64,000 nt of DNA from Guillardia theta CCMP2712. Lineage: Eukaryota > Protista > Cryptophyta. The stretch covers positions 1 through 64,000 of the forward strand of contig NW_005434537.1 in the NCBI RefSeq assembly GCF_000315625.1, given 5' to 3'. Positions 36,823 to 64,000 of the stretch are shown piece by piece. A program made the position numbers and the translations under genes. How positions within the stretch are numbered: the first letter of the stretch is position 1; every line of letters begins with the position of its first letter. The notes below the pieces were generated by a model. That model was not told where the DNA came from. It did no database searches and was given only the letters and a program-made list of their open reading frames with translations.

Positions 36823-36825
36823 GAT

Positions 36826-44266: not shown

Positions 44267-44315
44267 GTCGTTCTGTTGTATTTAAAGCATACGTGTCCGT
44301 ATCGTCATCCTACAC

Positions 44316-44525
44316 ATGGATATCACTACCTTGTATCTATCTAAGAACTGGACGCCCGAAGCCTTGGGCATGCTGAGTTTTGTGCCGGATGATCTCCGTG
44401 CGCGGGTGAAAGAAATCAGCGAGCGTGATGCGCTTCCTAATGAAGAAAACATTGTTAGGATTGCTGACCTCGAAGCGGCGTGTCGCCTTTTCAACATGGA
44501 CCTGTGGGAGATGATGCTTGAATAA
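44316..44525 (+). CDS. Small hypothetical protein
   Basis: 69 aa; TATTTAA at 44279-44285. Confidence 0.6.
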   Translation: MDITTLYLSKNWTPEALGMLSFVPDDLRARVKEISERDALPNEENIVRIADLEAACRLFNMDLWEMMLE

Positions 44526-44592
44526 GAACCTTCTCCCGTGTATCCCGTTGTAGCCAGTAAAAAATTAAAATCTTAAAGTATCGGTCCACCCC

Positions 44593-45222: not shown

Positions 45223-45358
45223 TTCGCAGGGAACGTTTCCTGTCTCCCCCCTTGCTCCTGTGTCCCGTTTTTTGGAGAGAGAGAGAAAAAAAAGTAGCTC
45301 CCGGCGTATAGCTGGGCGCACTTCAGGAGCTACTCCCCAGGTCTGGACGAGAGTTGTC

Positions 45359-45688
45359 ATGACCGAAGACGAAATCCTCGAGCACGTAGAGCAGGCGATG
45401 GACTCTGAGATGCAGGACGTCGAGGTGAAGGCCAAGAAGTCGAGCAAGGGCCGCGCCAAGAAGTCCGAGAGCAAGGGGGTGACCAAGCGCGCCGCGACCG
45501 CCAAGCCGTCAAAGCCGCGCCGCCCCTTCTCCAGGCTCACCGACGAGGTGCTGCAGCAGAGGCAGGACGCCCTGCAGGAGCGCCTCAACGTCTCCAAGGC
45601 GCAGATCACCATCATGAGCAGCAAGTGGCAGAAGTACGAGGACGAGCGGAAGCATCGTGTAGAGGATAAGCAGGAAGATTCGGAGTAG
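45359..45688 (+). CDS. Small basic/coiled-coil protein
   Basis: KAKKSSKGRAKK…KPRRP followed by a coiled coil; AATAAA at ~45698. Confidence 0.7.
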   Translation: MTEDEILEHVEQAMDSEMQDVEVKAKKSSKGRAKKSESKGVTKRAATAKPSKPRRPFSRLTDEVLQQRQDALQERLNVSKAQITIMSSKWQKYEDERKHRVEDKQEDSE

Positions 45689-45823
45689 TGTGCTATGAAT
45701 AAAGCAAGCCGTTCTTTCAAGTGCAAGCCGTGTTTTCCGTGTGCTCCGAAACGAAGAGTCTGCCTCCCTCCCTTTATTTAACCATGCCTTGAGGATTTCG
45801 GTCGAGTTTGGGGTTGGATTGAC

Positions 45824-46534
45824 ATGGAGGCAGAGCAATTTATGAGGATCAAAGACGAGGTGGATACACCCGACTGTCCCTTCAAACCCAAGGAGCGCGG
45901 GAGCGGCAGCTACGAGCGCTGCGTGGTGACCTGCAAGCCCTCCCACGCCTTCAGCGAGGAGATGCAGTCCTTCATTGACAACCAGGTGAACATGCCGCGG
46001 AAGCAGTGGGTGTACGAGGTGATCCGGGGCGAGCGGGAGACGGACAACGTCCTCCTCGACACCCCCGAGTTCGTCTTCCTCCCCGACACCCACGCGCTCA
46101 ACGACGGGAAGACCATCAACTGGCTGGCCGTGGTCAAGGACCGGGGCCTGAAGACCCTCCGCGACCTGCGGGGCTGCCACCTGCCGATGCTCCGCCGCCT
46201 GAGGGTGCAGTGCACCGAGTACATCCTCGCCAACACCGAGTGGAAGCGGCACAACATCATGGCCTACTTCCACTACCTCCCCAGCGTCTTCCAGCTGCAT
46301 GTCCACTTCTGCGCCCCGTACGGGTCCTACACCACCCTCGACGTCTTCAAGGTCCACCCCCTCGACACCGTCATCGGGAACCTGGAGATAGACAGCGAGT
46401 ACTACCGCAAGGCCGTCCTCCCCACCGTGGTGGTGGGCAACTCCGCGCTGCTCGGAGTCTACGGGCTCACCGCCGTGAACAACGACTACAGGAACGTGGA
46501 GTCGCCCGAGATCCAGCCCATAGGATGGAAGTGA
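45824..46534 (+). CDS. Scavenger mRNA decapping enzyme DcpS-like (HIT family)
   Basis: WVYEVI, FVFLPD, LKTLRDL…HLPML, YFHYLPSVFQLHVHF HIT motif. Confidence 0.88.
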   Translation: MEAEQFMRIKDEVDTPDCPFKPKERGSGSYERCVVTCKPSHAFSEEMQSFIDNQVNMPRKQWVYEVIRGERETDNVLLDTPEFVFLPDTHALNDGKTINWLAVVKDRGLKTLRDLRGCHLPMLRRLRVQCTEYILANTEWKRHNIMAYFHYLPSVFQLHVHFCAPYGSYTTLDVFKVHPLDTVIGNLEIDSEYYRKAVLPTVVVGNSALLGVYGLTAVNNDYRNVESPEIQPIGWK

Positions 46535-46611
46535 TGTGAGGGTGTATGCGTTGTCCCTGTCTTGTTTTTAGAACGCTATATAAACCACTGAACATGCCTG
46601 CATCCCGAAAC

Positions 46612-47451
46612 ATGGCGCACAGCATCGCGCAGTACACGGGGACGCGCATCGACTCCTCCGCGAAGCACATCGTCGCCTGCAAGGTGAACGGGAAGGTGTT
46701 TGAGCGGCTGGGGAACCAGGTGAAGCAGCTCACCGATGACAAGTACCGCTACGCCATGCAGAAGGACGAGCTCGTCCTGAGTGTTGCGCTGATGACGGAC
46801 GAGGACGTGGTGAGGGGCGCAGACCGGACGTTCCAGCGCACCTTCGTCAAGCACGCCTACCCTCCCGTGATCACCACCCTGGGGGACAAGCTTCTGGATG
46901 AGCACAAGACGGCCATCCGATTGTATTACCGGAACCTCTCCTTCGAGAACGAGGACGAGGGGATCGTCTACGATAGGAATGGGGTGGATCACTTCTTCCC
47001 CTTCAAGTTCGACTTCGTCGGTGTCAGCGTCGGCACCGCCTATGCCAGCGACCTGACGGGCGACCCCGTGGGCTCCGTCCTGATTGGCGGGATGATGACG
47101 GTGCTGAACGGCCACTTCCCCTGCTACACCGGGGAGCTGGTCCAGTGGTACTTCGACTTCGAATCGGAGGAGTTCGACCCGGACGGGAAGCGGATCGTGC
47201 CTGCTGGGATGGACCACCGTATCCGGTACCCCATCGGCGGAAGGGAGCACTTCTACCAGCAGCGCATGTTCGGGGCGCACGCGGACGCGAACCGGGGGAA
47301 GCAGAACGTGGCGCTGATCAAGCCCTTCCGAAAGATCCGGGACCGAAGAAACTATGCCTACGGGGACAAGGTGAGGGTGATCGGCAGGATCGTGAACGGG
47401 GGGCAGCCCTGGGAGCCCATCGACATCTTCCTGTCCAACACCTTCGTGTAG
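46612..47451 (+). CDS. Putative capsid triplex protein (paralog A)
   Basis: Clear paralog of the next gene; size and tandem pairing fit triplex 1/2; TATATAAA at 46577. Confidence 0.55.
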   Translation: MAHSIAQYTGTRIDSSAKHIVACKVNGKVFERLGNQVKQLTDDKYRYAMQKDELVLSVALMTDEDVVRGADRTFQRTFVKHAYPPVITTLGDKLLDEHKTAIRLYYRNLSFENEDEGIVYDRNGVDHFFPFKFDFVGVSVGTAYASDLTGDPVGSVLIGGMMTVLNGHFPCYTGELVQWYFDFESEEFDPDGKRIVPAGMDHRIRYPIGGREHFYQQRMFGAHADANRGKQNVALIKPFRKIRDRRNYAYGDKVRVIGRIVNGGQPWEPIDIFLSNTFV

Positions 47452-47519
47452 GCCATCGCTTTTTACATCCATGCAAAATCAAAGGTATTTAAGACTGAAG
47501 GGACAGCATCCCGGGAGAT

Positions 47520-48434
47520 ATGGCGAGTGTGGGGCAGATCACGGGCACGCAGGTGCATTCGGGGCCGAAGCACATCCTGCAGTGCCATGTGTCCGAGGAC
47601 GTGCTGCGGATGCTGGCCACCGAGGACACGAGGGAGCGGGTCCACCGCGACAAGATGCTGTACTGCATGCACAAGCACGAGCTCGCGCTGTGCTGCAGCA
47701 TCCCTTACAACACCAGCAACAACATGATGTTCAAGCAAAAGACGGCCTACCCTCCCGTGGTGACCACGCTTGGCTTCATCACCCCAGAGACCCGGAATCT
47801 CATCCGGGCGGTCTACAACGCGCAGACAGTGGAGCAGTTCGAGGAGAGCCGGGAGAACATCATCGCCCGCGCCGCCAGAGACCCGAACTTCAAGTTCTAC
47901 CTCCCACAGTTTACCTTCCAGGGGGTGGCGCAGACCCAGGCGTGGGCGACTTCGAACTTTGGGGACACGATCGGGTCCGTCCTGGTCGCGGGCTTCGCCA
48001 CCGTCATGAATGGCCACTTCCACGCCTACACGGGCGACGTCGTCCACTGGTACTTCGACTTCGAGAGCATCATGTTCGAGGATGACGGGACGAGGAGGCG
48101 GAACGGGGCCTTCAACTCCAATCCAGCGAATGTCAACTTGATCACCGAGGCGAACCCCGACTTCTACAACGCCGATCCGATCCGAATTGGCGAGAAGGCC
48201 GGGGAGCGGAAGGACTACCACGAGATGCGGGAGTACGGCAACTACCCGGAGCTCTACAAGAACCTTGACCGAAGGATCGGAAGCCGGGAGTACAAGCAGA
48301 ACATCATCTACCCGAAGCCCTACCTCTACGACGGCTGCGGGTATGGCGACCGCATCCGCGTCTTCGGGAGGGTGGTGAACGGCGGCAGGCCCTTCGAGCC
48401 CATCGATGTGCTCATCTTCTCGCAGTGTCGTTGA
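47520..48434 (+). CDS. Putative capsid triplex protein (paralog B)
   Basis: Shares AYPPVxTTLG, GSVL…TVxNGHF..YTG..V.WYFDFES, YGD..RV.GR.VNGG.P.EPID with 46612-47451; TATTTAA at 47486-47492. Confidence 0.55.
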   Translation: MASVGQITGTQVHSGPKHILQCHVSEDVLRMLATEDTRERVHRDKMLYCMHKHELALCCSIPYNTSNNMMFKQKTAYPPVVTTLGFITPETRNLIRAVYNAQTVEQFEESRENIIARAARDPNFKFYLPQFTFQGVAQTQAWATSNFGDTIGSVLVAGFATVMNGHFHAYTGDVVHWYFDFESIMFEDDGTRRRNGAFNSNPANVNLITEANPDFYNADPIRIGEKAGERKDYHEMREYGNYPELYKNLDRRIGSREYKQNIIYPKPYLYDGCGYGDRIRVFGRVVNGGRPFEPIDVLIFSQCR

Positions 48435-48457
48435 GTTCATTGAAATAAAATTACAAA

Positions 48458-48967
48458 TTACTTGATTGGTTTCCTGAGCTCGGCCTGGGTCTGCTGCAGC
48501 GAGAGGTGGAACACCTGCACGCAGTCCCTCTCGGACCAGCCCTGGAGGTCGTCCTCGGTGAAGCCGAGCGAGCGCCAGCGGTGGAGCGAGAAGGACCACC
48601 TCGCCATGATCTGCTTTGTCATCCCGATGTCGACGAGCTGGGCGTACGTCACCCCCATGGCCTCGAGGAGGTGGGAGGGTAGCTTGAGCTGCCAGAGCTC
48701 GCTGATGTCGGCGCGGAGGTGGAGGATGGGGTGGACGGGGAAGCAGAGCATGTCGGTGACCATGGGGAGCTGCACGTTGCCGTGCCTGACCCACTCCTCC
48801 GGGCTGGGCTGCAGGGTCTTGAGCTTCTCGGGGGACAGCCCCAGCGAGCGGAGGAACTGCCAGGTCAGGGCCTCGCTTGCGACGACGTGCTTCCAGGCCA
48901 GGACCGAGGAGGGGCGGGACCAGCCGTGGATCATGATGGACTGGTACGGCGTGAGTTCGATGGCCAT
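48458..48967 (-). CDS. Hypothetical protein with repeated L-x-x-(L/M/I)G helical motifs
   Basis: GC3-biased ORF from MAIELTPYQ. Confidence 0.7.
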   Translation of the reverse strand: MAIELTPYQSIMIHGWSRPSSVLAWKHVVASEALTWQFLRSLGLSPEKLKTLQPSPEEWVRHGNVQLPMVTDMLCFPVHPILHLRADISELWQLKLPSHLLEAMGVTYAQLVDIGMTKQIMARWSFSLHRWRSLGFTEDDLQGWSERDCVQVFHLSLQQTQAELRKPIK

Positions 48968-49146
48968 GGCGCGGACTTCGGGGCGGTGCTCTGGGCTTGG
49001 CATTACCTTCACTGATCCCCCCTGTCCGCCGTGTTGCCCGGACCGTACTATTTCCCAGTCTTATACCGTTCCTGCCGGTCCCGGACCCTACATGGCATTT
49101 ACTTATTTTTGTGTATTTAAGGAACGACCCTTCTTGGCTGTTCATC

Positions 49147-49713
49147 ATGTTTTTGCAATATCATACTGCTTTCTACACCGTGATTATCACGGACAACGAG
49201 AAGATTACGGGTGTCGTAACCTGCACTGGCAAGGAGATGTGCATGTCTGATTCCGAACGGTTCGGTCATATCAACGTCATCTGCAAGAACTCCCTCCCGG
49301 TTGACACATGCTTTGCAATTGTAAGAGATATCATAGAAAACCTCCCACTTCAGGACATCCGTCAAAAGTACGGTTACCTGGATGGCTCTCTTCTCGATTG
49401 TTTTGTGACAAATAACTACGAGAAGATCAGGGCTTTTTATGCTGGCCTCACAGATCGGTCTTACGAGACCATCGAGTCGTATTATAACCGCCTCCTCGAG
49501 AAGGAAACACTCATCCGCCAGAACTGTAAGCACTTGGTCAATGAGCTCAACCAGCGTCGCCACATTGACAATATCGGTGAACTGCAATATGCTTCGAGAT
49601 TTGTGAGCCACGAAGTCTACGGACATATGGCCTTATACCAAAATTTCGTGAATTCTTGCAATATGGACTTCAGTGACCTGCCGCTTTCTGAGTCCTGCTG
49701 GAGCCTTACCTGA
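49147..49713 (+). CDS. Hypothetical protein, paralog of 10696-11268
   Basis: MFLQYHTAFYTVIITDNEKITGVVTCTGKEMC vs MFVQIHCAYVTVIITNNKRIPRVITCIGKQLC; TATTTAA at 49114-49120. Confidence 0.8.
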   Translation: MFLQYHTAFYTVIITDNEKITGVVTCTGKEMCMSDSERFGHINVICKNSLPVDTCFAIVRDIIENLPLQDIRQKYGYLDGSLLDCFVTNNYEKIRAFYAGLTDRSYETIESYYNRLLEKETLIRQNCKHLVNELNQRRHIDNIGELQYASRFVSHEVYGHMALYQNFVNSCNMDFSDLPLSESCWSLT

Positions 49714-49883
49714 CCCTCTGCATCTCTCCCTTGAGCGCATAGAGAGTTGAGAGATCGGTGATTGTTGTTTCAGAATCAATAAAGATCTTACGTTCTTGAG
49801 CGTGTTTCCGTTATTTTTTTGGGTTGGGTGGATCACGTCGGGAAGGGGGGGGTGGCATGGCGAAAGGAGGGTAGCGGGGAGCC

Positions 49884-50426
49884 ATGAAGAAGCGCCTCTA
49901 CTCCGCCCTCTCCATCGACGAGCTCTCCTTCCTCCCGGGCGAGGGTGAGAGCGACGCGCCCCCGGCCTTCATCCACAACATCGTCAGCACGACCAAGATC
50001 CGGTCGAGCGTGGTGCCGCTCAACCTGAACTACATCGCGTCCGTGCTGCCCAACAGCTTCTACGACAAGCACAAGTTCGCCGCCATCACGATCCGCATCG
50101 ACAACCCCACCTGCACGGTGCTGCTCTTCAGCTCCGGGAAGCTGGTCCTGACCGGCTCCCAGAGCTGGTACAAGTGCCTGCACGCCTCGCTGAAGATCGT
50201 CGAGATGCTCCGCGCCTACATCATCGGGGTGGACTTCCACGTAGAAGACATCGTCGTCCAGAACATCGTCGGCAACGCCATCATCGACCTCCAGGGAAAT
50301 CGCACCTTGAATCTGGAAAGAATGTACAACGAGCAGTGCTCCAAGTGCACCTTCCAGAAGTCCCTCTTCCCGGGCCTCATCTTCCGCCCGGACAACTCCC
50401 CCGTCGTCCTCCTCTGCTTCGAGAGC
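49884..50426 (+). pseudogene. TBP: TATA-box-binding protein, 3'-truncated by the satellite junction
   Basis: Repeat 1 HNIVST…KFAAITIRIDNPTCTVLLFSSGKLVLTG; repeat 2 QNIVGN…LFPGLIFR…VLLCFES stops just before the expected GKxVxTG. Confidence 0.9.
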
Positions 50427-53400
50427 CAGATCCAAAAACCCATAGGGCATTTCTCCCAGGGGGAAGAAAACCTCCCTTGACCCCCCTGTTTCTCGACGGA
50501 TCCTGCCGGCCGGGCCCGTCAGTAGACCGACTGCAGCCTTCAGCCCCGCCTCAGACCCCCTGGAGGCCCGCCAGGAGGCTAAGTGTCCGGAGATTGGCCG
50601 GGGGCCCGATCTCTCCGGGCGGCCGTGACCGGTCAGCGGACCGTGTCAGCAGGCCCGTGACATGTCAGCCGGCTGACAGGGGCCGTGACCCGGCTGACAG
50701 GCTCACCTGACCGGTCACGTGACACATCACGTGACCGAGACAAGACTTTTTTATATCGCAGATCCAAAAACCCATAGGACATTTCTCCCAGGGGGAAGAA
50801 AACCTCCCTTGACCCCCCTGTTTCTCGACGGATCCTGCCGGCCGGGCCCGTCAGTAGACCGACTGCAGCCTTCAGCCCCGCCTCAGACCCCCTGGAGGCC
50901 CGCCAGGAGGCTAAGTGTCCGGAGATTGGCCGGGGGCCCGATCTCTCCGGGCGGCCGTGACCGGTCAGCGGACCGTGTCAGCAGGCCCGTGACATGTCAG
51001 CCGGCTGACAGGGTCCGTGACCCGGCTGACAGGCTCACCTGACCGGTCACGTGACACATCACGTGACCGAGACAAGACTTTTTTATATCGCAGATCCAAA
51101 AACCCATAGGACATTTCTCCCAGGGGGAAGAAAACCTCCCTTGACCCCCCTGTTTCTCGACGATCCTGCCGGCCGGGCCCGTCAGTAGACCGACTGCAGC
51201 CTTCAGCCCCGCCTCAGACCCCCTGGAGGCCCGCCAGGAGGCTAAGTGTCCGGAGATTGGCCGGGGGCCTGATCTCTCCGGGCGGCCGTGACCGGTCAGC
51301 GGACCGTGTCAGCAGGCCCGTGACATGTCAGCCGGCTGACAGGGGCCGTGACCCGGCTGACAGGCTCACCTGACCGGTCACGTGACACATCACGTGACCG
51401 AGACAAGACTTTTTTATATCGCAGATCCAAAAACCCATAGGGCATTTCTCCCAGGGGAAGAAAACCTCCCTTGACCCCCCTGTTTCTCGACGGATCCTGC
51501 CGGCCGGGCCCGTCAGTAGACCGACTGCAGCCTTCAGCCCCGCCTCAGACCCCCTGGAGGCCCGCCAGGAGGCTAAGTGTCCGGAGATTGGCCGGGGGCC
51601 TGATCTCTCCGGGCGGCCGTGACCGGTCAGCGGACCGTGTCAGCAGGCCCGTGACATGTCAGCCGGCTGACAGGGGCCGTGACCCGGCTGACAGGCTCAC
51701 CTGACCGGTCACGTGACACATCACGTGACCGAGACAAGACTTTTTTATATCGCAGATCCAAAAACCCATAGGACATTTCTCCCAGGGGGAAGAAAACCTC
51801 CCTTGACCCCCCTGTTTCTCGACGGATCCTGCCGGCCGGGCCCGTCAGTAGACCGACTGCAGCCTTCAGCCCCGCCTCAGACCCCCTGGAGGCCCGCCAG
51901 GAGGCTAAGTGTCCGGAGATTGGCCGGGGGCCTGATCTCTCCGGGCGGCCGTGACCGGTCAGCGGACCGTGTCAGCAGGCCCGTGACATGTCAGCCGGCT
52001 GACAGGGGCCGTGACCCGGCTGACAGGCTCACCTGACCGGTCACGTGACACATCACGTGACCGAGACAAGACTTTTTTATATCGCAGATCCAAAAACCCA
52101 TAGGACATTTCTCCCAGGGGAAGAAAACCTCCCTTGACCCCCCTGTTTCTCGACGGATCCTGCCGGCCGGCCCGTCAGTAGACCGACTGCAGCCTTCAGC
52201 CCCGCCTCAGACCCCCTGGAGGCCCGCCAGGAGGCTAAGTGTCCGGAGATTGGCCGGGGGCCCGATCTCTCCGGGCGGCCGTGACCGGTCAGCGGACCGT
52301 GTCAGCAGGCCCGTGACATGTCAGCCGGCTGACAGGGGCCGTGACCCGGCTGACAGGCTCACCTGACCGGTCACGTGACACATCACGTGACCGAGACAAG
52401 ACTTTTTTATATCGCAGATCCAAAAACCCATAGGACATTTCTCCCAGGGGGAAGAAAACCTCCCTTGACCCCCCTGTTTCTCGACGGATCCTGCCGGCCG
52501 GGCCCGTCAGTAGACCGACTGCAGCCTTCAGCCCCGCCTCAGACCCCCTGGAGGCCCGCCAGGAGGCTAAGTGTCCGGAGATTGGCCGGGGGCCCGATCT
52601 CTCCGGGCGGCCGTGACCGGTCAGCGGACCGTGTCAGCAGGCCCGTGACATGTCAGCCGGCTGACAGGGGCCGTGACCCGGCTGACAGGCTCACCTGACC
52701 GGTCACGTGACACATCACGTGACCGAGACAAGACTTTTTTATATCGCAGATCCAAAAACCCATAGGACATTTCTCCCAGGGGAAGAAAACCTCCCTTGAC
52801 CCCCCTGTTTCTCGACGGATCCTGCCGGCCGGGCCCGTCAGTAGACCGACTGCAGCCTTCAGCCCCGCCTCAGACCCCCTGGAGGCCCGCCAGGAGGCTA
52901 AGTGTCCGGAGATTGGCCGGGGGCCTGATCTCTCCGGGCGGCCGTGACCGGTCAGCGGACCGTGTCAGCAGGCCCGTGACATGTCAGCCGGCTGACAGGG
53001 TCCGTGACCCGGCTGACAGGCTCACCTGACCGGTCACGTGACACATCACGTGACCGAGACAAGACTTTTTTATATCGCAGATCCAAAAACCCATAGGACA
53101 TTTCTCCCAGGGGGAAGAAAACCTCCCTTGACCCCCCTGTTTCTCGACGGATCCTGCCGGCCGGGCCCGTCAGTAGACCGACTGCAGCCTTCAGCCCCGC
53201 CTCAGACCCCCTGGAGGCCCGCCAGGAGGCTAAGTGTCCGGAGATTGGCCGGGGGCCTGATCTCTCCGGGCGGCCGTGACCGGTCAGCGGACCGTGTCAG
53301 CAGGCCCGTGACATGTCAGCCGGCTGACAGGGTCCGTGACCCGGCTGACAGGCTCACCTGACCGGTCACGTGACACATCACGTGACCGAGACAAGACTTT

Positions 53401-56400
53401 TTTATATCGCAGATCCAAAAACCCATAGGACATTTCTCCCAGGGGAAGAAATCCTCCCTTGACCCCCCTGTTTCTCGACGGATCCTGCCGGCCGGGCCCG
53501 TCAGTAGACCGACTGCAGCCTTCAGCCCCGCCTCAGACCCCCTGGAGGCCCGCCAGGAGGCTAAGTGTCCGGAGATTGGCCGGGGGCCCGATCTCTCCGG
53601 GCGGCCGTGACCGGTCAGCGGACCGTGTCAGCAGGCCCGTGACATGTCAGCCGGCTGACAGGGGCCGTGACCCGGCTGACAGGCTCACCTGACCGGTCAC
53701 GTGACACATCACGTGACCGAGACAAGACTTTTTTATATCGCAGATCCAAAAACCCATAGGACATTTCTCCCAGGGGGAAGAAAACCTCCCTTGACCCCCC
53801 TGTTTCTCGACGGATCCTGCCGGCCGGGCCCGTCAGTAGACCGACTGCAGCCTTCAGCCCCGCCTCAGACCCCCTGGAGGCCCGCCAGGAGGCTAAGTGT
53901 CCGGAGATTGGCCGGGGGCCTGATCAGGCTCTCCGGGCGGCCGTGACCGGTCAGCGGACCGTGTCAGCAGGCCCGTGACATGTCAGCCGGCTGACAGGGG
54001 CCGTGACCCGGCTGACAGGCTCACCTGACCGGTCACGTGACACATCACGTGACCGAGACAAGACTTTTTTATATCGCAGATCCAAAAACCCATAGGACAT
54101 TTCTCCCAGGGGGAAGAAAACCTCCCTTGACCCCCCTGTTTCTCGACGGATCCTGCCGGCCGGGCCCGTCAGTAGACCGACTGCAGCCTTCAGCCCCGCC
54201 TCAGACCCCCTGGAGGCCCGCCAGGAGGCTAAGTGTCCGGAGATGGGCCCGATCTCTCCGGGCGGCCGTGACCGGTCAGCGGACCGTGTCAGCAGGCCCG
54301 TGACATGTCAGCCGGCTGACAGGGGCCGTGACCCGGCTGACAGGCTCACCTGACCGGTCACGTGACACATCACGTGACCGAGACAAGACTTTTTTATATC
54401 GCAGATCCAAAAACCCATAGGACATTTCTCCCAGGGGAAGAAAACCTCCCTTGACCCCCCTGTTTCTCGACGGATCCTGCCGGCCGGGCCCGTCAGTAGA
54501 CCGACTGCAGCCTTCAGCCCCGCCTCAGACCCCCTGGAGGCCCGCCAGGAGGCTAAGTGTCCGGAGATTGGCCGGGGGCCCGATCTCTCCGGGCGGCCGT
54601 GACCGGTCAGCGGACCGTGTCAGCAGGCCCCGTGACATGTCAGCCGGCTGACAGGGGCCGTGACCCGAGCTGACAGGCTCACCTGACCGGGTCACGTGAC
54701 CACATCACGTGACCGAGACAAGACTTTTTTATATCGCAGATCCAAAAACCCATAGGACATTTCTCCCAGGGGGAAGAAAACCTCCCTTGACCCCCCCTGT
54801 TTCTCGACGGATCTGCCGGCCGGGCCCGTCAGTAGACCGACTGCAGCCTTTCAGCCCCGCCTCAGACCCCTGGAGGCCCGCCAGGAGGCTAAGTGTCCGG
54901 AGATTGGCCGGGGGCCTCAGCTCTCCGGGCGGCCGTGACCGGTCAGCGGACCGTGTCAGCAGGCCCGTGACATGTCAGCCGGCTGACAGGGGCCGTGACC
55001 CGGCTGACAGGCTCACCTGACCGGTCACGTGACACATCACGTGACCGAGACAAGACTTTTTTATATCGCAGATCCAAAAACCCATAGGACATTTCTCCCA
55101 GGGGGAAGAAAACCTCCCTTGACCCCCCTGTTTCTCGACGGATCCTGCCGGCCGGGCCCGTCAGTAGACCGACTGCAGCCTTCAGCCCCGCCTCAGACCC
55201 CCTGGAGGCCCGCCAGGAGGCTAAGTGTCCGGAGATTGGCCGGGGGCCTGATCTCTCCGGGCGGCCGTGACCGGTCAGCGGACCGTGTCAGCAGGCCCGT
55301 GACATGTCAGCCGGCTGACAGGGGCCGTGACCCGGCTGACAGGCTCACCTGACCGGTCACGTGACACATCACGTGACCGAGACAAGACTTTTTTATATCG
55401 CAGATCCAAAAACCCATAGGACATTTCTCCCAGGGGGAAGAAAACCTCCCTTGACCCCCCTGTTTCTCGACGGATCCTGCCGGCCGGGCCCGTCAGTAGA
55501 CCGACTGCAGCCTTCAGCCCCGCCTCAGACCCCCTGAGCCCGCCAGAAGGCTAAGTGTCCGGAGATTGGCCGGGGGCCTTGATCTCTCCGGGCGGCCGTG
55601 ACCGGTCAGCGGACCGTGTCAGCAGGCCCGTGACATGTCAGCCGGCTGACAGGGGCCGTGACCCGGCTGACAGGCTCACCTGACCGGTCACGTGACACAT
55701 CACGTGACCGAGACAAGACTTTTTTATATCGCAGATCCAAAAACCCATAGGACATTTCTCCCAGGGGAAGAAAACCTCCCTTGACCCCCCTGTTTCTCGA
55801 CGGATCCTGCCGGCCGGGCCCGTCAGTAGACCGACTGCAGCCTTCAGCCCCGCCTCAGACCCCCTGGAGGCCCGCCAGGAGGCTAAGTGTCCGGAGATTG
55901 GCCGGGGGCCTGATCTCTCCGGGCGGCCGTGACCGGTCAGCGGACCGTGTCAGCAGGCCCGTGACATGTCAGCCGGCTGACAGGGTCCGTGACCCGGCTG
56001 ACAGGCTCACCTGACCGGTCACGTGACACATCACGTGACCGAGACAAGACTTTTTTATATCGCAGATCCAAAAACCCATAGGACATTTCTCCCAGGGGAA
56101 GAAAACCTCCCTTGACCCCCCTGTTTCTCGACGGATCCTGCCGGCCGGGCCCGTCAGTAGACCGACTGCAGCCTTCAGCCCCGCCTCAGACCCCCTGGAG
56201 GCCCGCCAGGAGGCTAAGTGTCCGGAGATTGGCCGGGGGCCTGATCTCTCCGGGCGGCCGTGACCGGTCAGCGGACCGTGTCAGCAGGCCCGTGACATGT
56301 CAGCCGGCTGACAGGGGCCGTGACCCGGCTGACAGGCTCACCTGACCGGTCACGTGACACATCACGTGACCGAGACAAGACTTTTTTATATCGCAGATCC

Positions 56401-58749
56401 AAAAACCCATAGGACATTTCTCCCAGGGGGAAGAAAACCTCCCTTGACCCCCCTGTTTCTCGACGGATCCTGCCGGCCGGGCCCGTCAGTAGCCTGACGA
56501 CTGCAGCCTTCAGCCCCGCCTCAGACCCCCTGGAGGCCCGCCAGGAGGCTAAGTGTCCGGAGATTGGCCGGGGGCCTGATCTCTCCGGGCGGCCGTGACC
56601 GGTCAGCGGACCGTGTCAGCAGGCCCGTGACATGTCAGCCGGCTGACAGGGGCCGTGACCCGGCTGACAGGCTCACCTGACCGGTCACGTGACACATCAC
56701 GTGACCGAGACAAGACTTTTTTATATCGCAGATCCAAAAACCCATAGGACATTTCTCCCAGGGGGAAGAAAACCTCCCTTGACCCCCCTGTTTCTCGACG
56801 GATCCTGCCGGCCGGGCCCGTCAGTAGACCGACTGCAGCCTTCAGCCCCGCCTCAGACCCCCTGGAGGCCCGCCAGGAGGCTAAGTGTCCGGAGATTGGC
56901 CGGGGGCCTGATCTCTCCGGGCGGCCGTGACCGGTCAGCGGACCGTGTCAGCAGGCCCGTGACATGTCAGCCGGCTGACAGGGGCCGTGACCCGGCTGAC
57001 AGGCTCACCTGACCGGTCACGTGACACATCACGTGACCGAGACAAGACTTTTTTATATCGCAGATCCAAAAACCCATAGGACATTTCTCCCAGGGGGAAG
57101 AAAACCTCCCTTGACCCCCCTGTTTCTCGACGGATCCTGCCGGCCGGGCCGGTCAGTAGACCGACTGCAGCCTTCAGCCCCGCCTCAGACCCCCTGGAGG
57201 CCCGCCAGGAGGCTAAGTGTCCGGAGATTGGCCGGGGGCCTGATCTCTCCGGGCGGCCGTGACCGGTCAGCGGACCGTGTCAGCAGGCCCGTGACATGTC
57301 AGCCGGCTGACAGGGGCCGTGACCCGGCTGACAGGCTCACCTGACCGGTCACGTGACACATCACGTGACCGAGACAAGACTTTTTTATATCGCAGATCCA
57401 AAAACCCATAGGACATTTCTCCCAGGGGGAAGAAAACCTCCCTTGACCCCCCTGTTTCTCGACGGATCCTGCCGGCCGGGCCCGTCAGTAGACCGACTGC
57501 AGCCTTCAGCCCCGCCTCAGACCCCCTGGAGGCCCGCCAGGAGGCTAAGTGTCCGGAGATTGGCCGGGGGCCTGATCTCTCCGGGCGGCCGTGACCGGTC
57601 AGCGGACCGTGTCAGCAGGCCCGTGACATGTCAGCCGGCTGACAGGGGCCGTGACCCGGCTGACAGGCTCACCTGACCGGTCACGTGACACATCACGTGA
57701 CCGAGACAAGACTTTTTTATATCGCAGATCCAAAAACCCATAGGACATTTCTCCCAGGGGGAAGAAAACCTCCCTTGACCCCCCTGTTTCTCGACGGATC
57801 CTGCCGGCCGGGCCCGTCAGTAGACCGACTGCAGCCTTCAGCCCCGCCTCAGACCCCCTGGAGGCCCGCCAGGAGGCTAAGTGTCCGGAGATTGGCCGGG
57901 GGCCTGATCTCTCCGGGCGGCCGTGACCGGTCAGCGGACCGTGTCAGCAGGCCCGTGACATGTCAGCCGGCTGACAGGGGCCGTGACCCGGCTGACAGGC
58001 TCACCTGACCGGTCACGTGACACATCACGTGACCGAGACAAGACTTTTTTATATCGCAGATCCAAAAACCCATAGGACATTTCTCCCAGGGGAAGAAAAC
58101 CTCCCTTGACCCCCCTGTTTCTCGACGGATCCTGCCGGCCGGGCCCGTCAGTAGACCGACTGCAGCCTTCAGCCCCGCGTCAGACCCCCTGGAGGCCCGC
58201 CAGGAGGCTAAGTGTCCGGAGATTGGCCGGGGGCCTGATCTCTCCGGACGGCCGTGACCGGTCAACGGACCGTGTCAGCAGGCCCGTGACATGTCAGCCG
58301 GCTGACAGGGTCCGTGACCCGGCTGACAGGCTCACCTGACCGGTCACGTGACACATCACGTGACCGAGACAAGACTACGTTATATCGCAGATCCACAAAC
58401 CCATAGGACATTTCTCCCAGGGGGAAGAAAACCTCCCTTGACCCCCCTGTTTCTCGACGGATCCTGCCGGCCGGGCCCGTCAGTAGACCGACTGCAGCCT
58501 TCAGCCCCGCCTCAGACCCCCTGGAGGCCCGCCAGGAGGCTAAGTGTCCGGAGATTGGCCGGGGGCCTGATCTCTCCGGGCGGCCGTGACCGGTCAGCGG
58601 ACCGTGTCAGCAGGCCCGTGACATGTCAGCCGGCTGACAGGGGCCGTGACCCGGCTGACAGGCTCACCTGACCGGTCACGTGACACATCACGTGACCGAG
58701 ACAAGACTTTTTTATATCGCAGATCCAAAAACCCATAGGACATTTCTCC
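50427..58749. repeat. 332-bp satellite, ~25 highly homogeneous monomers
   Basis: Period 332 (e.g. 56689, 57021, 57353, 57685), 331 where the G5 run is G4; few SNP variants. Confidence 0.98.
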
Positions 58750-61526
58750 CATAGCGTTGTCGGGTCAAGGAACTTGCTGACAATTGGGATTTGTACCAGA
58801 TCCAGGCATTTTCCAGTACAAAATTGTGTGTGAGTAAAAAATCGAAGGATTGGAAGGTTTGAAAATCCATTTCCAGCGCTGCACGTTCAACGGCAACCGG
58901 GGGTAATTGAGAGCTTAGATAAGTAAACAGTTGTTCCTATTGCCTTTGCATAGGATCACTTGGCCCTTGTATAGTGGAGTAATGATTTGTACCAGAACCT
59001 GATGGGTAGGCGTGGTAGTAATTCAAATGATTTGAACCCAACGGACGCGACACTGAGGGGGGTGGGGGGTACAGGTCTTGGTCTGGTACTGTAATGGGTA
59101 CCTTTTAAAATACATTTAGCAGAGGGGGTCTCCCTCCCCATCTCCCTGCCCTCCGCACTTGCGCATCCCTATCCTTCCCTGTCCATGAGTCTCAGACTCT
59201 CGTCAGACCTTCCCTGATGACCCTCAACTTTCTTTGACGCTTCTGTCTGCCTTGTCCTTCCTCAACTTGCTGGAAATTCAAACTCTGAAACCATGCCCAT
59301 GAGTTGACAAGCACTGAGTTTCTCAGTTTGAATGCGGGAGGAAAGATGATTCATGGAATGAAACTCAGTGGTTCATATTTCAAGCTGATAGATACGAGTC
59401 GTATAGCACTGGCTTATGACTGTCATTTTACTTCTCAATGATACAGCATCAAGAACTTGCTCTCGATCCATCAGTACTTGCAAAGGGTCATTTTTCAGAC
59501 AGAACTTCGAGTTCATCTTTATTTTGCGTCGATCCACACGATGACATCTGTTTGATACACTATGTTTGATGAATATCAAGAAAGAGGCTGAACTGTGCAC
59601 CGCTTGACTGAATTTTCTACAATACTCTTCAATTGTGTAAGAGAGCATGTCACATGTAATCATACCAGGCAAACAAGTCACAGTATCGCTCCAAACCGCG
59701 TTGTGCTTGAAACTGAGACTCTACATGAAGATGTTATCGGACTAGTCGAATGATGTACAACTTTATGGTGATACGTGGTTTAGAACTGTTGCAAAGCGGA
59801 CATGGGAATATGTAGCGGCCTAGGTGATGTTTTCAACGTACTTCAATAAAACAAAGCCAAGTTGTTGCTAACAACATCATCATTTCTCCATGAGCCTGCA
59901 TGACCTGATGTACATGTTAGAGAAGTCGATGCTCATTCATCAAAAGAGTGGTTAGACAAGAAATTGGTAGATGCTTCTGCGCAGCATTCTTGTGTATGTG
60001 GAATCGTGCACACTCACCGTCGTGTGTATGTGGAATCGTGCACACTCACCGTCGATACATTGTCCTTATCATCTGGAATGGTTAACTTTCGCTGCAAGTA
60101 ATGGTTGGAATGCCGGCGATGCATTGCAGCCTGCATAGCACCTGAGCGCTTTGTTCCACTTATCGCTTGGTTCCTTTGTTCCACTTATCGCTTGGTTCCA
60201 AACAATTGATGATATCGCAGCATGCAACTCGCATTGGCCCAAGGGTGTCAAGCGAGGAAAAGATCAGGATGATGGAAGGGCGAGAATGCAGCGAATAAGA
60301 GAAGCTGTTCAGGCTCAGTTTACTTTGTGTAAGAAAATGCCAATGCGTTGTACATGTTAGGTCACAAAGAAAGAGGCAAGAAAGCTCAGGTATGAGACTC
60401 GAGAAGAAAGATTTATTCAAAAGGGTATGTCCATTTTCGTCTGCATGATTCAATCGGATCCAACATCAATTCATTGCTCCTGATACCATGTCAGTCTAGT
60501 CACAACAAAGATATCAGCACCTTGAAAATTTCTTGCTTCGACTCGAGGTGAAGGAAATGAAATATGATTTACAATGCTATAAGGGGTATCGTTTTGTCGC
60601 TCAAAGCGTCTTGATTGTAAGTCATGAAATAGAACACGACATGCAATCAATTTGCAAGTCATGCCTTCATGTGGTACCTCATCACTGCCATTTGATGAAT
60701 GCACTGGTATTCCTTGAAACTCTTTACATGCCTTGGCAATACTCTTGCATATTGCTCAGACCGCCCTCAAGCCCGACTCTTTGCAGCAGATTCCTATGAA
60801 ATAAGTATAGATCATGCTGTCTCCGTGACATGCTTCATGACTTCCTACTTATTGCTCATGAGAGTCAATGTCATCCATCGTACAGCGCCACTAGCGGACA
60901 GTCCGTGCGGAGTACTCCTTATTCAAGCTGCTAAAATCTATGATGATCAACCCTCTTTACATGTGTTTGCAATCACAGAGATGTTTTCAGACTGCTGCGC
61001 TCACACCAGATTCTGCAGGGATTGCCTCTGCTTGTCCTGGTCTGAGCTCTCCTGCTGCAGATGAGTCACGTCTGCGTAACACTCACTTGCTAACCTTGGA
61101 TATGCAACCAGGGAAGGGAAGGGGCAAGGCTTGAGAGCTCCCTCTGATCTACAAGGGTGGTCTATGTTGGTCGGAGGCAGGGTAGGGTCCAAAACTTGAC
61201 CCCATCGGAGAAGGGACTTTCACTGGGAAACAGGTGGGTCCAAAGCATCATAGTTTGAACAGGGGAGGTACCGCATAAACTATTTTGGTACAAGTTTTCC
61301 TAACAGTACTCGAATATGTACCATAAAATTGGTACTGTTGGTACAATTATTTGCTACCAGGAAGTACCCTACCCCCTTAAACAGGTCCCAACCAATTTGA
61401 ATCAGCTCCCAGCCGACTGACCCACCCCAGACCCCAACTGCCATTTGCTATTCACATATGTGGAAGGATACCCCCACAGAAAACTATTGGAAACCAGAGG
61501 GGTCAGTTGAGAGCGACAACGCTATG
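58750..61526. mobile_element. Non-autonomous/decayed DNA transposon-like element with 13-bp TIRs
   Basis: CATAGCGTTGTCG at 58750 and CGACAACGCTATG at 61514-61526; satellite resumes in register; no long ORF; internal tandem duplications near 59990-60054 and 60150-60200. Confidence 0.8.
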
Positions 61527-63193
61527 CCAGGGGGAAGAAAACCCGTGACCGGTCAGCGGACCGTGTCAGCAGGCCCGTGACATGTCAGCCGGCTGACAGG
61601 GGCCTTCAGCCCCGCCTCAGACCCCCTGGAGGCCCGCCAGGAGGCTAAGTGTCCGGAGATTGGCCGGGGGCCTGATCTCTCCGGGCGGCCGTGACCGGTC
61701 AGCGGACCGTGTCAGCAGGCCCGTGACATGTCAGCCGGCTGACAGGGGCCGTGACCCGGCTGACAGGCTCACCTGACCGGTCACGTGACACATCACGTGA
61801 CCGAGACAAGACTTTTTTATATCGCAGATCCAAAAACCCATAGGACATTTCTCCCAGGGGGAAGAAAACCTCCCTTGACCCCCCTGTTTCTCGACGGATC
61901 CTGCCGGCCGGGCCGGTCAGTAGACCGACTGCAGCCTTCAGCCCCGCCTCAGACCCCCTGGAGGCCCGCCAGGAGGCTAAGTGTCCGGAGATTGGCCGGG
62001 GGCCTGATCTCTCCGGGCGGCCGTGACCGGTCAGCGGACCGTGTCAGCAGGCCCGTGACATGTCAGCCGGCTGACAGGGGCCGTGACCCGGCTGACAGGC
62101 TCACCTGACCGGTCACGTGACACATCACGTGACCGAGACAAGACTTTTTTATATCGCAGATCCAAAAACCCATAGGACATTTCTCCCAGGGGGAAGAAAA
62201 CCTCCCTTGACCCCCCTGTTTCTCGACGGATCCTGCCGGCCGGGCCCGTCAGTAGACCGACTGCAGCCTTCAGCCCCGCCTCAGACCCCCTGGAGGCCCG
62301 CCAGGAGGCTAAGTGTCCGGAGATTGGCCGGGGGCCTGATCTCTCCGGGCGGCCGTGACCGGTCAGCGGACCGTGTCAGCAGGCCCGTGACATGTCAGCC
62401 GGCTGACAGGGGCCGTGACCCGGCTGACAGGCTCACCTGACCGGTCACGTGACACATCACGTGACCGAGACAAGACTTTTTTATATCGCAGATCCAAAAA
62501 CCCATAGGACATTTCTCCCAGGGGAAGAAAACCTCCCTTGACCCCCCTGTTTCTCGACGGATCCTGCCGGCCGGGCCCGTCAGTAGACCGACTGCAGCCT
62601 TCAGCCCCGCCTCAGACCCCCTGGAGGCCCGCCAGGAGGCTAAGTGTCGGAGATTGGCCGGGGGCCTGATCTCTCCGGCGGCCGTGACCGGTCAGCGGAC
62701 GTGTCAGCAGGCCCGTGACATGTCAGCCGGCTGACAGGGGCCGTGACCCGGCTGACAGGCTCACCTGACCGGTCACGTGACACATCACGTGACCGAGACA
62801 AGACTTTTTTATTATGATCGCAGATCCAAAAACCCATAGGACATTTCTCCCAGGGGGAAGAAAACCTCCCTTGACCCCCCTGTTTCTCGACGGATCCTGC
62901 CGGCCGGGCCGGTCAGTAGACCGACTGCAGCCTTCAGCCCCGCCTCAGACCCCCTGGAGGCCCGCCAGGAGGCTAAGTGTCCGGAGATTGGCCGGGGGCC
63001 TGATCTCTCCGGGCGGCCGTGACTCGGTGACCGGTCAGCGGACCGTGTCAGCAGGCCCGTGACATGTCAGCCGGCTGACAGGGGCCGTGACCCGGCTGAC
63101 AGGCTCACCTGACCGGTCACGTGACACATCACGTGACCGAGACAAGACTTTTTTATATCGCAGATCCAAAAACCCATAGGACATTTCTCCCAG
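61527..63193. repeat. 332-bp satellite, ~5 monomers, first one rearranged
   Basis: Same monomer; scrambled segment 61543-61605. Confidence 0.97.
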
Positions 63194-64000
63194 TGTCAGA
63201 GCTCATAGGAACCGAGCCCGAGTCAGACAAAGGCCTATGAGGATGAAAGGACAGTTGGCTGTCTCGTGCTCGTGTTCGAAGCTGACTTCTCCTGGATGAC
63301 CCAGGATACTCTACTCCAGTGTGAAGCTGCTGAAAGGACCCCTGTGGAGGCCTTTGTTGCAGCAACCGTGTACCCGTGGGGGACTTACAAGGTAAACAGA
63401 AGGGGTGCGTCTTGTGCAGTACGACCCGTTGGAAACAGCTTGCTGCCATGCAAGGACGGGGTTCTCTTCCCTGCGAGAGAGCATGGTATCCTCTCGAAGG
63501 TCAGAAGGGATGCTTGTCAACTTCCAAGAACAGGACACCCCTCCTTTCTGTAGCCAAGAGACGGCACCCCTGGCTCATTCCTCGAAGCTATAAAAGGATG
63601 AAACTCGTCAGAGCTAGGTGGTCCTCTTCCCCTTTCGTGTGTGTGCCACGATTGTTGAGACGTCTTTGTGTGTATCGTCTTGTCTTGTTTTGTGTGTGTG
63701 TGTGAAAGAAATAAAAGAGAGTTAGATCTCCTTCTGTTTCACCGCTTTCCCTCTTAGTAGAGAAATCCAACGTGAGTTCTTATTGAACTGCGCTTGAAGG
63801 TCCACTCGAGAATCTTCGAGGTGTGACATAAAATTGGTAGCAAGGTTGTGATCGGTGATAGAGATCGAGTCTTCTCTCTTCCCCTCCCTTTCTCCACTGT
63901 TCTTCTGCTTCTTCCTACGCTTACGTCGCGTAGATGTCCGGATACAATACTCGACTCGCAGCTCGCATGCTGGACGAGAATGCTACGGATACTTTGGAAC
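63194..64000 (+). mobile_element. LTR retrotransposon 5' end: LTR 63194-63828, PBS ~63835-63845
   Basis: TGTCA…TGACA termini, TATAAAA at 63589, AATAAA at 63710, TGGTAGCAAGG after a 6-nt spacer (initiator-Met-tRNA-like PBS). Confidence 0.8.

What the first reader, a model, noticed from the sequence alone, without database searches (positions are those of the whole stretch)
50427..63200. One short AT-rich segment of the satellite monomer attracts every insertion and most lesions
Seen: the virus (at cg|cagatcc), the TIR element (catttctcc|) and the LTR element (catttctcccag|) all land within ~30 nt of the 332-bp monomer, the last two 3-4 nt apart. Deletions near 50 and 316 and altered T-tracts at ~58376 and ~62811 map to the same ~70-nt stretch. 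Inference: the monomer (about two nucleosomes long) has one exposed or break-prone linker that works as a shared landing pad for unrelated viruses and transposons.
Basis: partly seen in the sequence, partly recalled or inferred. Interest (0 to 1): 0.78.

Follow-up and report, generated by a model that had tools for sequence, protein, structure and literature searches.

The report
Insertion hot spot in satellite monomer
In a 332-bp satellite array, probably of the alga Guillardia theta, all four long insertions (a virus fragment, two transposons and a stray piece of the satellite) have a junction in one 34-nt zone of the repeat unit, which suggests but, with four events, does not prove a preferred break or entry site; ordinary mutations show no such focus.

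Summary
On a consensus monomer (position 1 = CAGATCC), the 49.5-kb viral insert resumes at position 1, the TIR element sits at 30|31 and the LTR element at 33|34.

Three corrections:
- The viral insert's left junction is at position 300, so 32 nt of satellite were lost. That junction lies at the loop of an 11-bp-stem palindrome, not in AT-rich DNA.
- The two "deletions" near 50 and 316 are one event. A 267-nt partial monomer was inserted at position 24-27. That makes four long insertions, three of them within 8 nt.
- "Most lesions" is wrong. The 35 distinct small variants and the eight short structural lesions are spread evenly along the monomer.

Clustering of the four insertions has nominal P of 0.004-0.03, chosen post hoc. 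All 12 structural events together do not cluster (P = 0.11).

The virus is a truncated mirusvirus-like fragment, a kind already reported in Guillardia theta. The LTR element is a chromodomain Ty3/gypsy element. The TIR element is non-autonomous.

A real break or entry hot spot is plausible (about 0.5). The nucleosome-linker mechanism is untested. A genome-wide test could not be run here.

The parts
1..923 (+). Satellite block 1. It starts at monomer position 310 and ends at position 300, at the virus junction. It contains the 267-nt inserted partial monomer.
48..317 (+). 267-nt partial monomer (about positions 57-322) inserted at monomer position 24-27. Four equally good placements (window 48-51 to 314-317) mean 3 nt of junction microhomology.
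   Evidence: removing the block restores the consensus across the join.
924..50426 (.). 49,503-bp mirusvirus-like DNA fragment. ORFs are dense, without evident introns and on both strands, and most have no Pfam match. There are no terminal repeats. The right end is cut inside a gene.
   Evidence: PMC12768974; PMC10827195
6833..10609 (+). 1258-aa capsid-like ORF with conserved N-terminal (1-370) and C-terminal (994-1247) parts and a variable middle. It has more than 600 metagenome homologues, and the cluster (at least 90% identity) of its 92%-identical homologue P0040 holds Guillardia theta GUITHDRAFT_118897.
   Evidence: Fold search of homologue P0064: the top PDB hits are herpesvirus major capsid proteins, but with E about 0.08.
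23391..23888 (-). 165-aa ORF with a weak match to the prohead serine protease family Peptidase_S78 (E = 7e-4, 20.2 bits against a cut-off of 21).
28720..29436 (+). Snf7 (ESCRT-III-like) ORF.
   Evidence: PF03357, E = 2.4e-14. PMC12768974 lists Snf7 as a mirusvirus core function not found in nucleocytoviruses.
45824..46534 (+). DcpS_C / HIT decapping-enzyme-like ORF. Homologues occur in Hanusia phi and Guillardia theta.
49884..50426 (+). TATA-binding-protein ORF, cut by the satellite junction in its second repeat. It reads ...VVLLCFES| and lacks the GK.V.TG motif that the first repeat has.
   Evidence: PF00352, E = 3.9e-25
50427..58749 (+). Satellite block 2, 25 monomers, starting at monomer position 1 and ending at position 30.
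57678..57703 (.). Example copy of the monomer's strongest palindrome (positions 286-311): an 11-bp perfect stem with the 4-nt loop CACA. The virus's left junction (position 300) is the last loop base.
57724..57758 (.). Example copy of the junction zone (monomer positions 332-34). It holds the virus right junction (332|1), the fragment site (24-27), the TIR site (30|31) and the LTR site (33|34).
58750..61526 (.). 2,777-bp non-autonomous TIR element, with TIRs at 58750-58762 and 61514-61526. GC is about 50%. The longest ORF is 121 aa and has no Pfam match. At most one C is duplicated at the target.
61527..61601 (+). Rearranged monomer remnant right of the TIR element: positions 30-46, then 197-255, then a jump back to 110. 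The joins have 1-3 nt of microhomology.
61602..63193 (+). Satellite block 3, 4.8 monomers, ending at monomer position 33.
63194..64000 (+). 5' end of a Ty3/gypsy chromovirus. The LTR runs from 63194 to about 63828 (TG...CA). A PBS-like TGGTAGCAAGG starts at 63835 and gag starts at 63935. The rest lies outside the window.
   Evidence: One search shows that relative L001 encodes gag-PR-RT-RNaseH-IN-SH3-chromodomain.

Best explanation
A GC-rich 332-bp satellite, in heterochromatin of Guillardia theta or a close relative, has been interrupted four times by long DNA. Each time a junction lies in monomer positions 332-34, and three lie within 8 nt (24-34). I take this short zone to be the place where the monomer is most often cut or entered.

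The zone is the 3' edge of the monomer's only low-stability stretch. That stretch sits between an 11-bp-stem palindrome (286-311) and a 7-bp inverted repeat (31-37 / 56-62).

Two routes appear to use it:
1. Double-strand breaks repaired by end-joining that captures whatever DNA is at hand. One case is the truncated mirusvirus fragment, with 32 nt lost and its left break at the palindrome loop. The other is the 267-nt satellite fragment, with 1-3 nt microhomologies.
2. Enzymatic integration. One case is the TIR transposon. The other is the chromovirus, whose chromodomain explains why it is in the satellite at all.

Shown: the coordinates, the truncation of the virus, the single-event nature of the 'two deletions', and the identities of the elements. 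Inferred: that the coincidence reflects a hot spot rather than chance, and what makes the site special.

The hot spot concerns long insertions only. Point mutations and short indels are spread evenly.
For: - All four long insertions have a junction inside a 34-nt arc. P = 0.004, or 0.03 with the virus's left junction. Some three of the four within 7 nt: P = 0.005.
- The fourth event was found after the hypothesis was stated and falls 4-7 nt from the TIR and LTR sites.
- The elements arrived by different mechanisms:
  - The virus is cut inside its TBP gene and has no terminal repeats.
  - The TIR element has perfect 13-bp TIRs at both junctions.
  - The LTR boundary is confirmed by L001, a chromodomain Ty3/gypsy element.
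- The low-stability zone is centred on positions 315-25, with the sites at its edge.
- The palindrome 286-311 folds as predicted, and the virus junction is at its loop.
- Precedents exist for monomer-level hot spots: PMC8091179 and PMC3154508.
Against: - There are only four events in one window, and the category 'long insertions' and the arc were chosen after looking.
- With all 12 structural events, the scan P is 0.11 (67 nt) or 0.29 (8 nt).
- Short structural lesions and small variants show no enrichment.
- Sites 26-33 are in a C3AG5 motif with 45-50% AT, not in AT-rich DNA.
- The virus's left junction at the palindrome loop has roughly a 1-in-10 chance of being a coincidence (my estimate).
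- The LTR's target duplication is outside the window, and the TIR element's is at most 1 bp, so the integration chemistry is not verified.
- No second locus could be examined.
Confidence: 0.5

Rival explanations
1. Chance. Four insertions happened to fall close together in a 332-bp unit, and nothing is special about the site.
For: n = 4. The test was defined after seeing the data. All structural events together do not cluster (P = 0.11-0.29). Small variants are uniform.
Against: Three independent events of three different kinds lie within 8 nt (P = 0.005 for some three of four). The fourth event was found after the hypothesis and fell inside the predicted zone.
Confidence: 0.3
2. Two phased nucleosomes per monomer leave one exposed linker at the AT-rich stretch, and anything that needs accessible DNA enters there.
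For: The monomer length is 332, about 2 x 166. The only A/T runs (T6 at 321, A5 at 8, A4 at 41) and the lowest duplex stability lie in this zone. There is a direct precedent: the Drosophila 359-bp SAT III holds two nucleosomes, and one of its two linkers carries a unique topoisomerase II cleavage site (PMC3154508).
Against: There is no internal 166-bp dimer. Periodicity of breakpoints at 166 nt is not distinctive (P = 0.4-0.55 after scanning periods). Three of the four sites are at 24-34, outside the AT-rich core. From general knowledge, retroviral-type integrases tend to prefer nucleosome-wrapped, bent DNA over linkers. Chromatin was not and cannot be tested here.
Confidence: 0.2
3. Separate sequence preferences. 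The TIR transposase and the chromoviral integrase each recognise a short motif around CTCCCAGGGGG (the 7-bp palindrome CCCAGGG is centred on position 32). The virus and the satellite fragment are unrelated end-joining accidents nearby.
For: The TIR site (30|31) and the LTR site (33|34; a 5-bp duplication would span 29-33) fall within the same 7-bp palindrome. In Cuscuta satellite CUS-TR24, LINE insertions hit two adjacent monomer sites because of the endonuclease's target motif (PMC8091179).
Against: About five such 3+1+3 palindromes are expected by chance in 332 nt (my arithmetic). No other copies of either element with flanks were found, so no target consensus can be built. This explanation does not cover the fragment insertion at 24-27 or the virus.
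Confidence: 0.25
4. Assembly artefact. The joins between satellite and non-satellite DNA are mis-joins in a hard-to-assemble repeat.
For: One 300-nt stretch of the array (54628-54920) carries eight one-base indels, which suggests locally poor consensus.
Against: The two virus junctions are in the same orientation and phase apart from a 32-nt loss. The TIR element's inverted repeats sit exactly at both junctions, with the flanks in phase. The LTR begins at its true first base. Mis-joins would not respect element ends.
Confidence: 0.04

Closest known systems
Cuscuta europaea satellite CUS-TR24 with L1-CS LINE insertions (Vondrak et al. 2021, PMC8091179)
   Same: Insertions into a satellite array map to two adjacent short regions of the monomer. 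The same monomer also has a region that is often lost at junctions. The monomer sequence is held to shape the array's break-up.
   Different: There, one LINE lineage with a known endonuclease motif (TTCTA / TTTCAA) was mapped over many insertions. Here, four events of three mechanistic kinds (end-joined DNA, TIR element, LTR element) come from one window with no statistics beyond it.
Drosophila melanogaster 359-bp (1.688, SAT III) satellite: two nucleosomes per repeat and a unique topoisomerase II cleavage site in one linker (as described in PMC3154508)
   Same: The monomer is about two nucleosomes long, with one preferred break site per repeat in a short stretch whose base composition contrasts with the rest.
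   Different: The composition is the mirror image: that satellite is AT-rich with a GC-rich site. Cleavage and nucleosome phasing were measured there, and nothing of the kind has been measured here. There it concerns enzyme cleavage, not insertions.
Chromoviruses (Ty3/gypsy elements with a chromodomain at the integrase C-terminus)
   Same: The window's LTR is 88% identical over the aligned columns (flanks included) to that of L001, which encodes gag-PR-RT-RNaseH-IN-SH3-chromodomain. From general knowledge, such chromodomains direct integration to heterochromatin, which fits a satellite target.
   Different: Chromodomain tethering explains the choice of region, not the choice of nucleotide within the monomer. 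The window holds only the first 807 bp of the element.
Endogenous mirusvirus fragments in protist genomes, including Guillardia theta (Zhao et al., PMC10827195; Aurantiochytrium integrant, PMC12606086; core gene set, PMC12768974)
   Same: The insert carries TBP and Snf7 genes and a long capsid-like protein with conserved ends. Cluster mates of that protein's 92%-identical homologue are annotated in G. theta, an assembly listed with mirusvirus capsid homologues (clade E03).
   Different: This is a 49.5-kb piece cut inside a gene and joined into satellite DNA with loss of 32 nt. The cited text, as far as I read it, does not discuss integration sites or satellite junctions.
Capture of filler DNA at double-strand breaks by end-joining (general knowledge)
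   Same: Both the viral fragment and the 267-nt satellite piece have non-terminal ends, small target deletions or 1-3 nt microhomologies, and no target duplication.
   Different: The repair pathway is inferred from the junction anatomy only.

Membership tests
Satellite DNA | Long head-to-tail array of a fixed-length unit with high copy identity | tested here: met
   332-bp period, 25.1 + 4.8 + about 2.8 copies, 97-98% matches. Shared variants alternate every second monomer.
LTR retrotransposon, Ty3/gypsy chromovirus | LTR beginning TG, with homology to the LTR of an element that encodes gag-pol | tested here: met
   Homology to the L001 3' LTR starts exactly at TGTCAG, just after L001's polypurine tract. 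The L001 5' region and gag start match window 63700-64000.
LTR retrotransposon, Ty3/gypsy chromovirus | Polyprotein with RT, RNase H, integrase and a C-terminal chromodomain | tested here: met
   Shown for the relative L001 only: RVT_1, RT_RNaseH, rve, Integrase_H2C2 and Chromo at E = 6e-13. The window's own pol lies outside the window.
LTR retrotransposon, Ty3/gypsy chromovirus | Target-site duplication of 4-6 bp flanking both LTRs | not testable with these tools
   The 3' end of the element is beyond position 64000.
Cut-and-paste TIR DNA transposon | Terminal inverted repeats exactly at the element's ends | tested here: met
   13/13 complementary bases at 58750-58762 and 61514-61526, at both satellite junctions.
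Cut-and-paste TIR DNA transposon | Target-site duplication of a length typical of a superfamily | tested here: inconclusive
   The flanks end at monomer position 30 and resume at 30/31, so at most one C is duplicated. The right flank is rearranged. No superfamily could be assigned.
Cut-and-paste TIR DNA transposon | Transposase gene | tested here: not met
   The longest ORF is 121 aa with no Pfam match. If it is a transposon, it is non-autonomous. No other copy was found in the window or in the viral collection.
Mirusviricota | HK97-fold major capsid protein of herpesvirus type | tested here: inconclusive
   The 1258-aa ORF has conserved ends and a variable middle. The model of homologue P0064 has pLDDT 62.8. 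The top PDB hits are nearly all herpesvirus major capsid proteins, but with E about 0.08 and TM about 0.07. The viral library gave mixed hits. Its G. theta cluster mate is in an assembly reported to hold mirusvirus capsid homologues (PMC10827195).
Mirusviricota | Core accessory functions: TATA-binding protein and Snf7 | tested here: met
   PF00352 at E = 3.9e-25 and PF03357 at E = 2.4e-14. PMC12768974 names both as core functions and reports Snf7 as unknown in nucleocytoviruses.
Mirusviricota | Capsid maturation protease, portal, terminase and triplex proteins | tested here: inconclusive
   Only a sub-threshold Peptidase_S78 match was found (20.2 bits against a cut-off of 21). No portal or terminase appeared among the 50 ORFs scanned. 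The fragment covers only part of a genome.
Nucleocytoviricota (giant viruses) | Double jelly-roll capsid (PF04451), A32 ATPase, D5 primase-helicase, family B polymerase | tested here: not met
   None was found among the 50 ORFs scanned against Pfam.
Two-nucleosome satellite with one exposed linker (Drosophila SAT III type) | Phased nucleosomes and a measured cleavage or accessibility site once per monomer | not testable with these tools
   This needs MNase, ATAC or cleavage mapping. The sequence proxies give no support: there is no 166-bp sub-repeat and no distinctive 166-nt periodicity of breakpoints.

The most novel reading that the evidence does not exclude
Each 332-bp monomer carries one constitutive break or entry site, set by chromatin or by a topoisomerase-type enzyme. 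This site serves both as the door through which mirusvirus DNA becomes endogenous by end-joining and as the shared target of unrelated transposons. Satellite heterochromatin would then act as a sink that captures and silences invading DNA at a defined nucleotide position.
Probability: 0.15. Interest if true: 0.7.

Novelty: new member of a known kind. Interest (0 to 1): 0.4.

Why it matters
If the hot spot is real, it would be a case where a single short site in a satellite repeat governs how an array is broken up. It would also bear on how viral DNA becomes endogenous in an alga that can be grown in culture.

The question of chromatin against intrinsic DNA structure against enzyme motif would then be directly testable, by nucleosome and break mapping on a repeat present in many copies.

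If it is chance, the window is still a clean example of a mirusvirus fragment end-joined into satellite DNA, next to a chromovirus and a non-autonomous TIR element.

Tried and rejected
- **More copies of the satellite elsewhere.** I searched the viral contigs, metagenome contigs and prokaryotic genome contigs. All gave 0 hits.
- **Other copies of the TIR end and LTR end with flanks.** There were none in the window or in the viral contigs. The metagenome scan for the LTR end gave one contig, L001, which ends inside its LTRs and so has no flanks.
The near-identical viral copies seen in protein searches (P0001, P0040, P0163) could therefore not be inspected for their junctions.
- **Dinucleosome periodicity of breakpoints.** The nominal signal at 166 nt vanishes once other periods are considered.
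- **Internal 166-bp dimer.** Absent.
- **Lesion enrichment in the AT-rich arc.** Absent.
- **Giant-virus (Nucleocytoviricota) reading of the insert.** No hallmark genes were found.
- **Sequence search of large ORFs against solved structures.** Nothing useful.
- **A relative of the capsid-like ORF in viral contigs.** None found.
- **tRNA genes in the window.** None, so the primer-binding site could not be matched.
- **Superfamily assignment for the TIR element.** Not possible from 13-bp TIRs and a 0-1 bp duplication.
Full report
**What is in the window**

Tandem Repeats Finder shows a 332-bp repeat at 50-923, 50427-58751 (25.1 copies, 98% matches) and 61602-63193. I built a majority consensus from 13 clean copies and numbered it from CAGATCC as position 1. 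The monomer is 63.6% G+C. Its only A/T runs are A5 at 8, A4 at 41 and T6 at 321. Its least stable 21-nt windows are centred on positions 315-25. Three stretches of other DNA interrupt the array: 924-50426, 58750-61526, and 63194 to the end of the window.

**The junctions**

- Its left junction at 923|924 follows ...GGTCACGTGACACA, monomer position 300. The insert therefore replaced 32 nt (301-332).
- The second element begins at 58750 and ends at 61526 with perfect 13-bp inverted repeats (CATAGCGTTGTCG). The flanks end at monomer position 30 and resume at 30/31, so at most one C is duplicated.
- The third element begins TGTCAG at 63194, after monomer position 33.

**The two "deletions" are one insertion**

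On the monomer they are 27-55 and 321-24. Both share the breakpoint 24-27.

Removing one 267-nt block (window 48-51 to 314-317, monomer about 57-322) leaves a monomer that matches the consensus across the join. The only differences are three variants elsewhere in that monomer. Two independent deletions would have to share a breakpoint to the nucleotide, so a single event is the better reading. A partial monomer was inserted at position 24-27, and three nucleotides of placement ambiguity indicate microhomology. The window therefore has four long insertions, and three of them lie within 8 nt: 24-27, 30|31 and 33|34.

**Other lesions**

Aligning each monomer to the consensus gave 35 distinct small variants in 58 occurrences. 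Six fall in the 67-nt arc 300..34, which is 17% against 20% expected (P = 0.74).

The common variants are shared between monomers. Some alternate every second copy, so they are array substructure rather than fresh damage:
- loss of one G from the G5 run at 33 (9 copies)
- T>C at 181 (8 copies)
- G>T at 256 (6 copies)
- C>G at 91 (3 copies)

Of eight short structural lesions, two are in the arc (TTT>ACG at 322-324 and +TATG at 329). Six are outside: +TGA at 102, -TGGCCGG at 169, +CAGG at 185, +GTGACTCG at 199, a 151-nt deletion of 46-196, and a back-jump from 256 to 110. "Most lesions" is therefore not supported.

**Is the clustering more than chance?**

| Test | Result |
|---|---|
| Same, using the virus's left junction | P = 0.12 |
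| Four long insertions in the observed arc | P = 0.004 (virus right junction), 0.013 (midpoint), 0.03 (left junction) |
| Some three of the four within 7 nt | P = 0.005 |
| All 12 structural events, 67-nt scan window | P = 0.11 |
| All 12 structural events, 8-nt scan window | P = 0.29 |

The category and the arc were chosen after looking, so these values are suggestive only. The fourth event is a partial replication, because it was recognised after the hypothesis had been stated.

**Local DNA features**

The strongest palindrome of the monomer is at 286-311, with an 11-bp perfect stem and the 4-nt loop CACA. It is predicted as a hairpin in single-strand folds that are far more stable than shuffled controls (z about -4). 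The virus's left junction is the last base of that loop. A second inverted repeat, CAGGGGG / CCCCCTG (31-37 / 56-62), has its 5' base at the TIR and LTR sites.

Sites 26-33 have 45-50% A+T. They lie at the edge of the low-stability zone, not in its core. These are leads. I estimate the loop coincidence alone at roughly a 1-in-10 chance.

**Test of the nucleosome idea from sequence**

- The monomer has no internal 166-bp repeat; the best shifted self-identity is 0.34.
- Folding breakpoints modulo 166 gives a nominal P of 0.03-0.06. Periods of 72-75 nt score higher, and after scanning all periods P is 0.4-0.55.
- Chromatin itself cannot be tested here.

**What the inserts are**

*Large insert.* Most ORFs in the 49.5-kb insert have no Pfam match. 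The exceptions are:
- a TATA-binding protein (E = 3.9e-25)
- a DcpS-type decapping enzyme
- Snf7 (E = 2.4e-14)
- a nucleotide-kinase-like P-loop protein
- a PD-(D/E)XK nuclease
- a sub-threshold prohead-protease match

The TBP gene is cut by the satellite junction in its second repeat, and the insert has no terminal repeats. It is therefore a fragment, not a complete integrated genome.

PMC12768974 lists TBP and Snf7 among mirusvirus core functions and says Snf7 has not been found in nucleocytoviruses. No nucleocytovirus hallmark gene was found.

The 1258-aa ORF at 6833-10609 has more than 600 homologues in metagenomes, with conserved ends and a variable middle. A model of a 1000-aa homologue was of moderate quality (pLDDT 62.8). 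Its best PDB matches were almost all herpesvirus major capsid proteins, but at E about 0.08, so this is only a hint.

The 92%-identical homologue P0040 belongs to a cluster at 90% identity or more that also holds Guillardia theta CCMP2712 protein GUITHDRAFT_118897. The G. theta assembly is listed with mirusvirus capsid homologues in PMC10827195. I conclude that the insert is a mirusvirus-like fragment and that the host is G. theta or a close relative. The host call is indirect, because it rests on viral genes.

*LTR element.* A metagenome contig (L001) carries an LTR that is 88% identical to window 63194-63760 over the aligned columns. Homology starts at the same TG, directly after a polypurine tract. 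Its 5' region and gag start match the window. Its polyprotein has gag, protease, RT, RNase H, integrase, SH3 and a chromodomain. The window's element is therefore a chromovirus. From general knowledge, chromodomains tether integration to heterochromatin, which explains the choice of region but not the nucleotide.

*TIR element.* It is 2,777 bp with about 50% G+C. It has no ORF above 121 aa and no Pfam match, so it is non-autonomous. Its superfamily is unknown.

**Mechanism**

I think a real hot spot for long insertions at monomer 332-34 is the most likely reading (about 0.5). It would be used in two ways. One is end-joining repair of breaks, as in the virus fragment (with a 32-nt loss) and the satellite fragment (with microhomology). 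The other is enzymatic integration, as in the TIR element and the chromovirus. Chance remains a serious rival (about 0.3).

The cause of the site's preference is open. The candidates are a nucleosome linker, intrinsic DNA structure next to palindromes, a topoisomerase-type cut, or short target motifs. The rearranged monomer next to the TIR element (61527-61601) and the other internal joins show 1-3 nt microhomologies. This fits microhomology-mediated repair throughout the array.

**Comparison with what is known**

Monomer-level insertion hot spots are known in Cuscuta CUS-TR24, where one LINE lineage hits two adjacent sites because of its endonuclease motif (PMC8091179). A two-nucleosome satellite with one break site in one linker is known in Drosophila SAT III (PMC3154508). 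Endogenous mirusvirus fragments in G. theta are already reported (PMC10827195). What would be new is the sharing of one site by mechanistically unrelated events. The present evidence for that is four events in one window.

**Limits**

The satellite is absent from the three searchable collections.
The only consensus built is that of the satellite monomer.

Noticed in passing
window 30595-31102: A near-perfect palindrome of about 508 bp lies inside the viral insert. The outer 80 nt are 100% complementary and the inner arms 87-88%. It is AT-rich, with AACCGTTA repeats, and sits between two divergent ORFs. It could be a replication origin, a foldback element or an assembly foldback.
   Followed up: partly
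window 54628-54920: Eight one-base insertions or deletions occur within 300 nt of otherwise clean satellite. This looks like locally poor consensus rather than biology.
   Followed up: no
window 51422-53442: The G5-to-G4 variant at monomer position 33 recurs in every second monomer (51454, 52117, 52779, 53442). This points to a dimeric higher-order repeat in part of the array.
   Followed up: partly
window 61527-61601: The monomer just right of the TIR element is scrambled: positions 30-46, then 197-255, then back to 110. The joins have 1-3 nt microhomology, which suggests repair activity next to the element.
   Followed up: partly
window 46546-47451 and 47520-48434: Two adjacent paralogous ORFs (301 and 304 aa) share motifs but have no Pfam match. 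This is a tandem gene duplication in the viral fragment.
   Followed up: no
window 25499-25545 and 25966-26012: A T-rich motif ending ...TTTTTTTTCTATGAAC..TGCGCT is repeated in a stretch without a long ORF. It may be a viral promoter-like element.
   Followed up: no
window 15093-15199: A 27-bp tandem repeat (4 copies, in frame) lies inside ORF 14433-16205 on the minus strand.
   Followed up: no
L001 1-6007 (Ga0172376_10020710): This metagenome contig is a nearly complete chromovirus that begins and ends inside its LTRs. It shows that a close relative of the window's element occurs in an environmental sample.
   Followed up: yes
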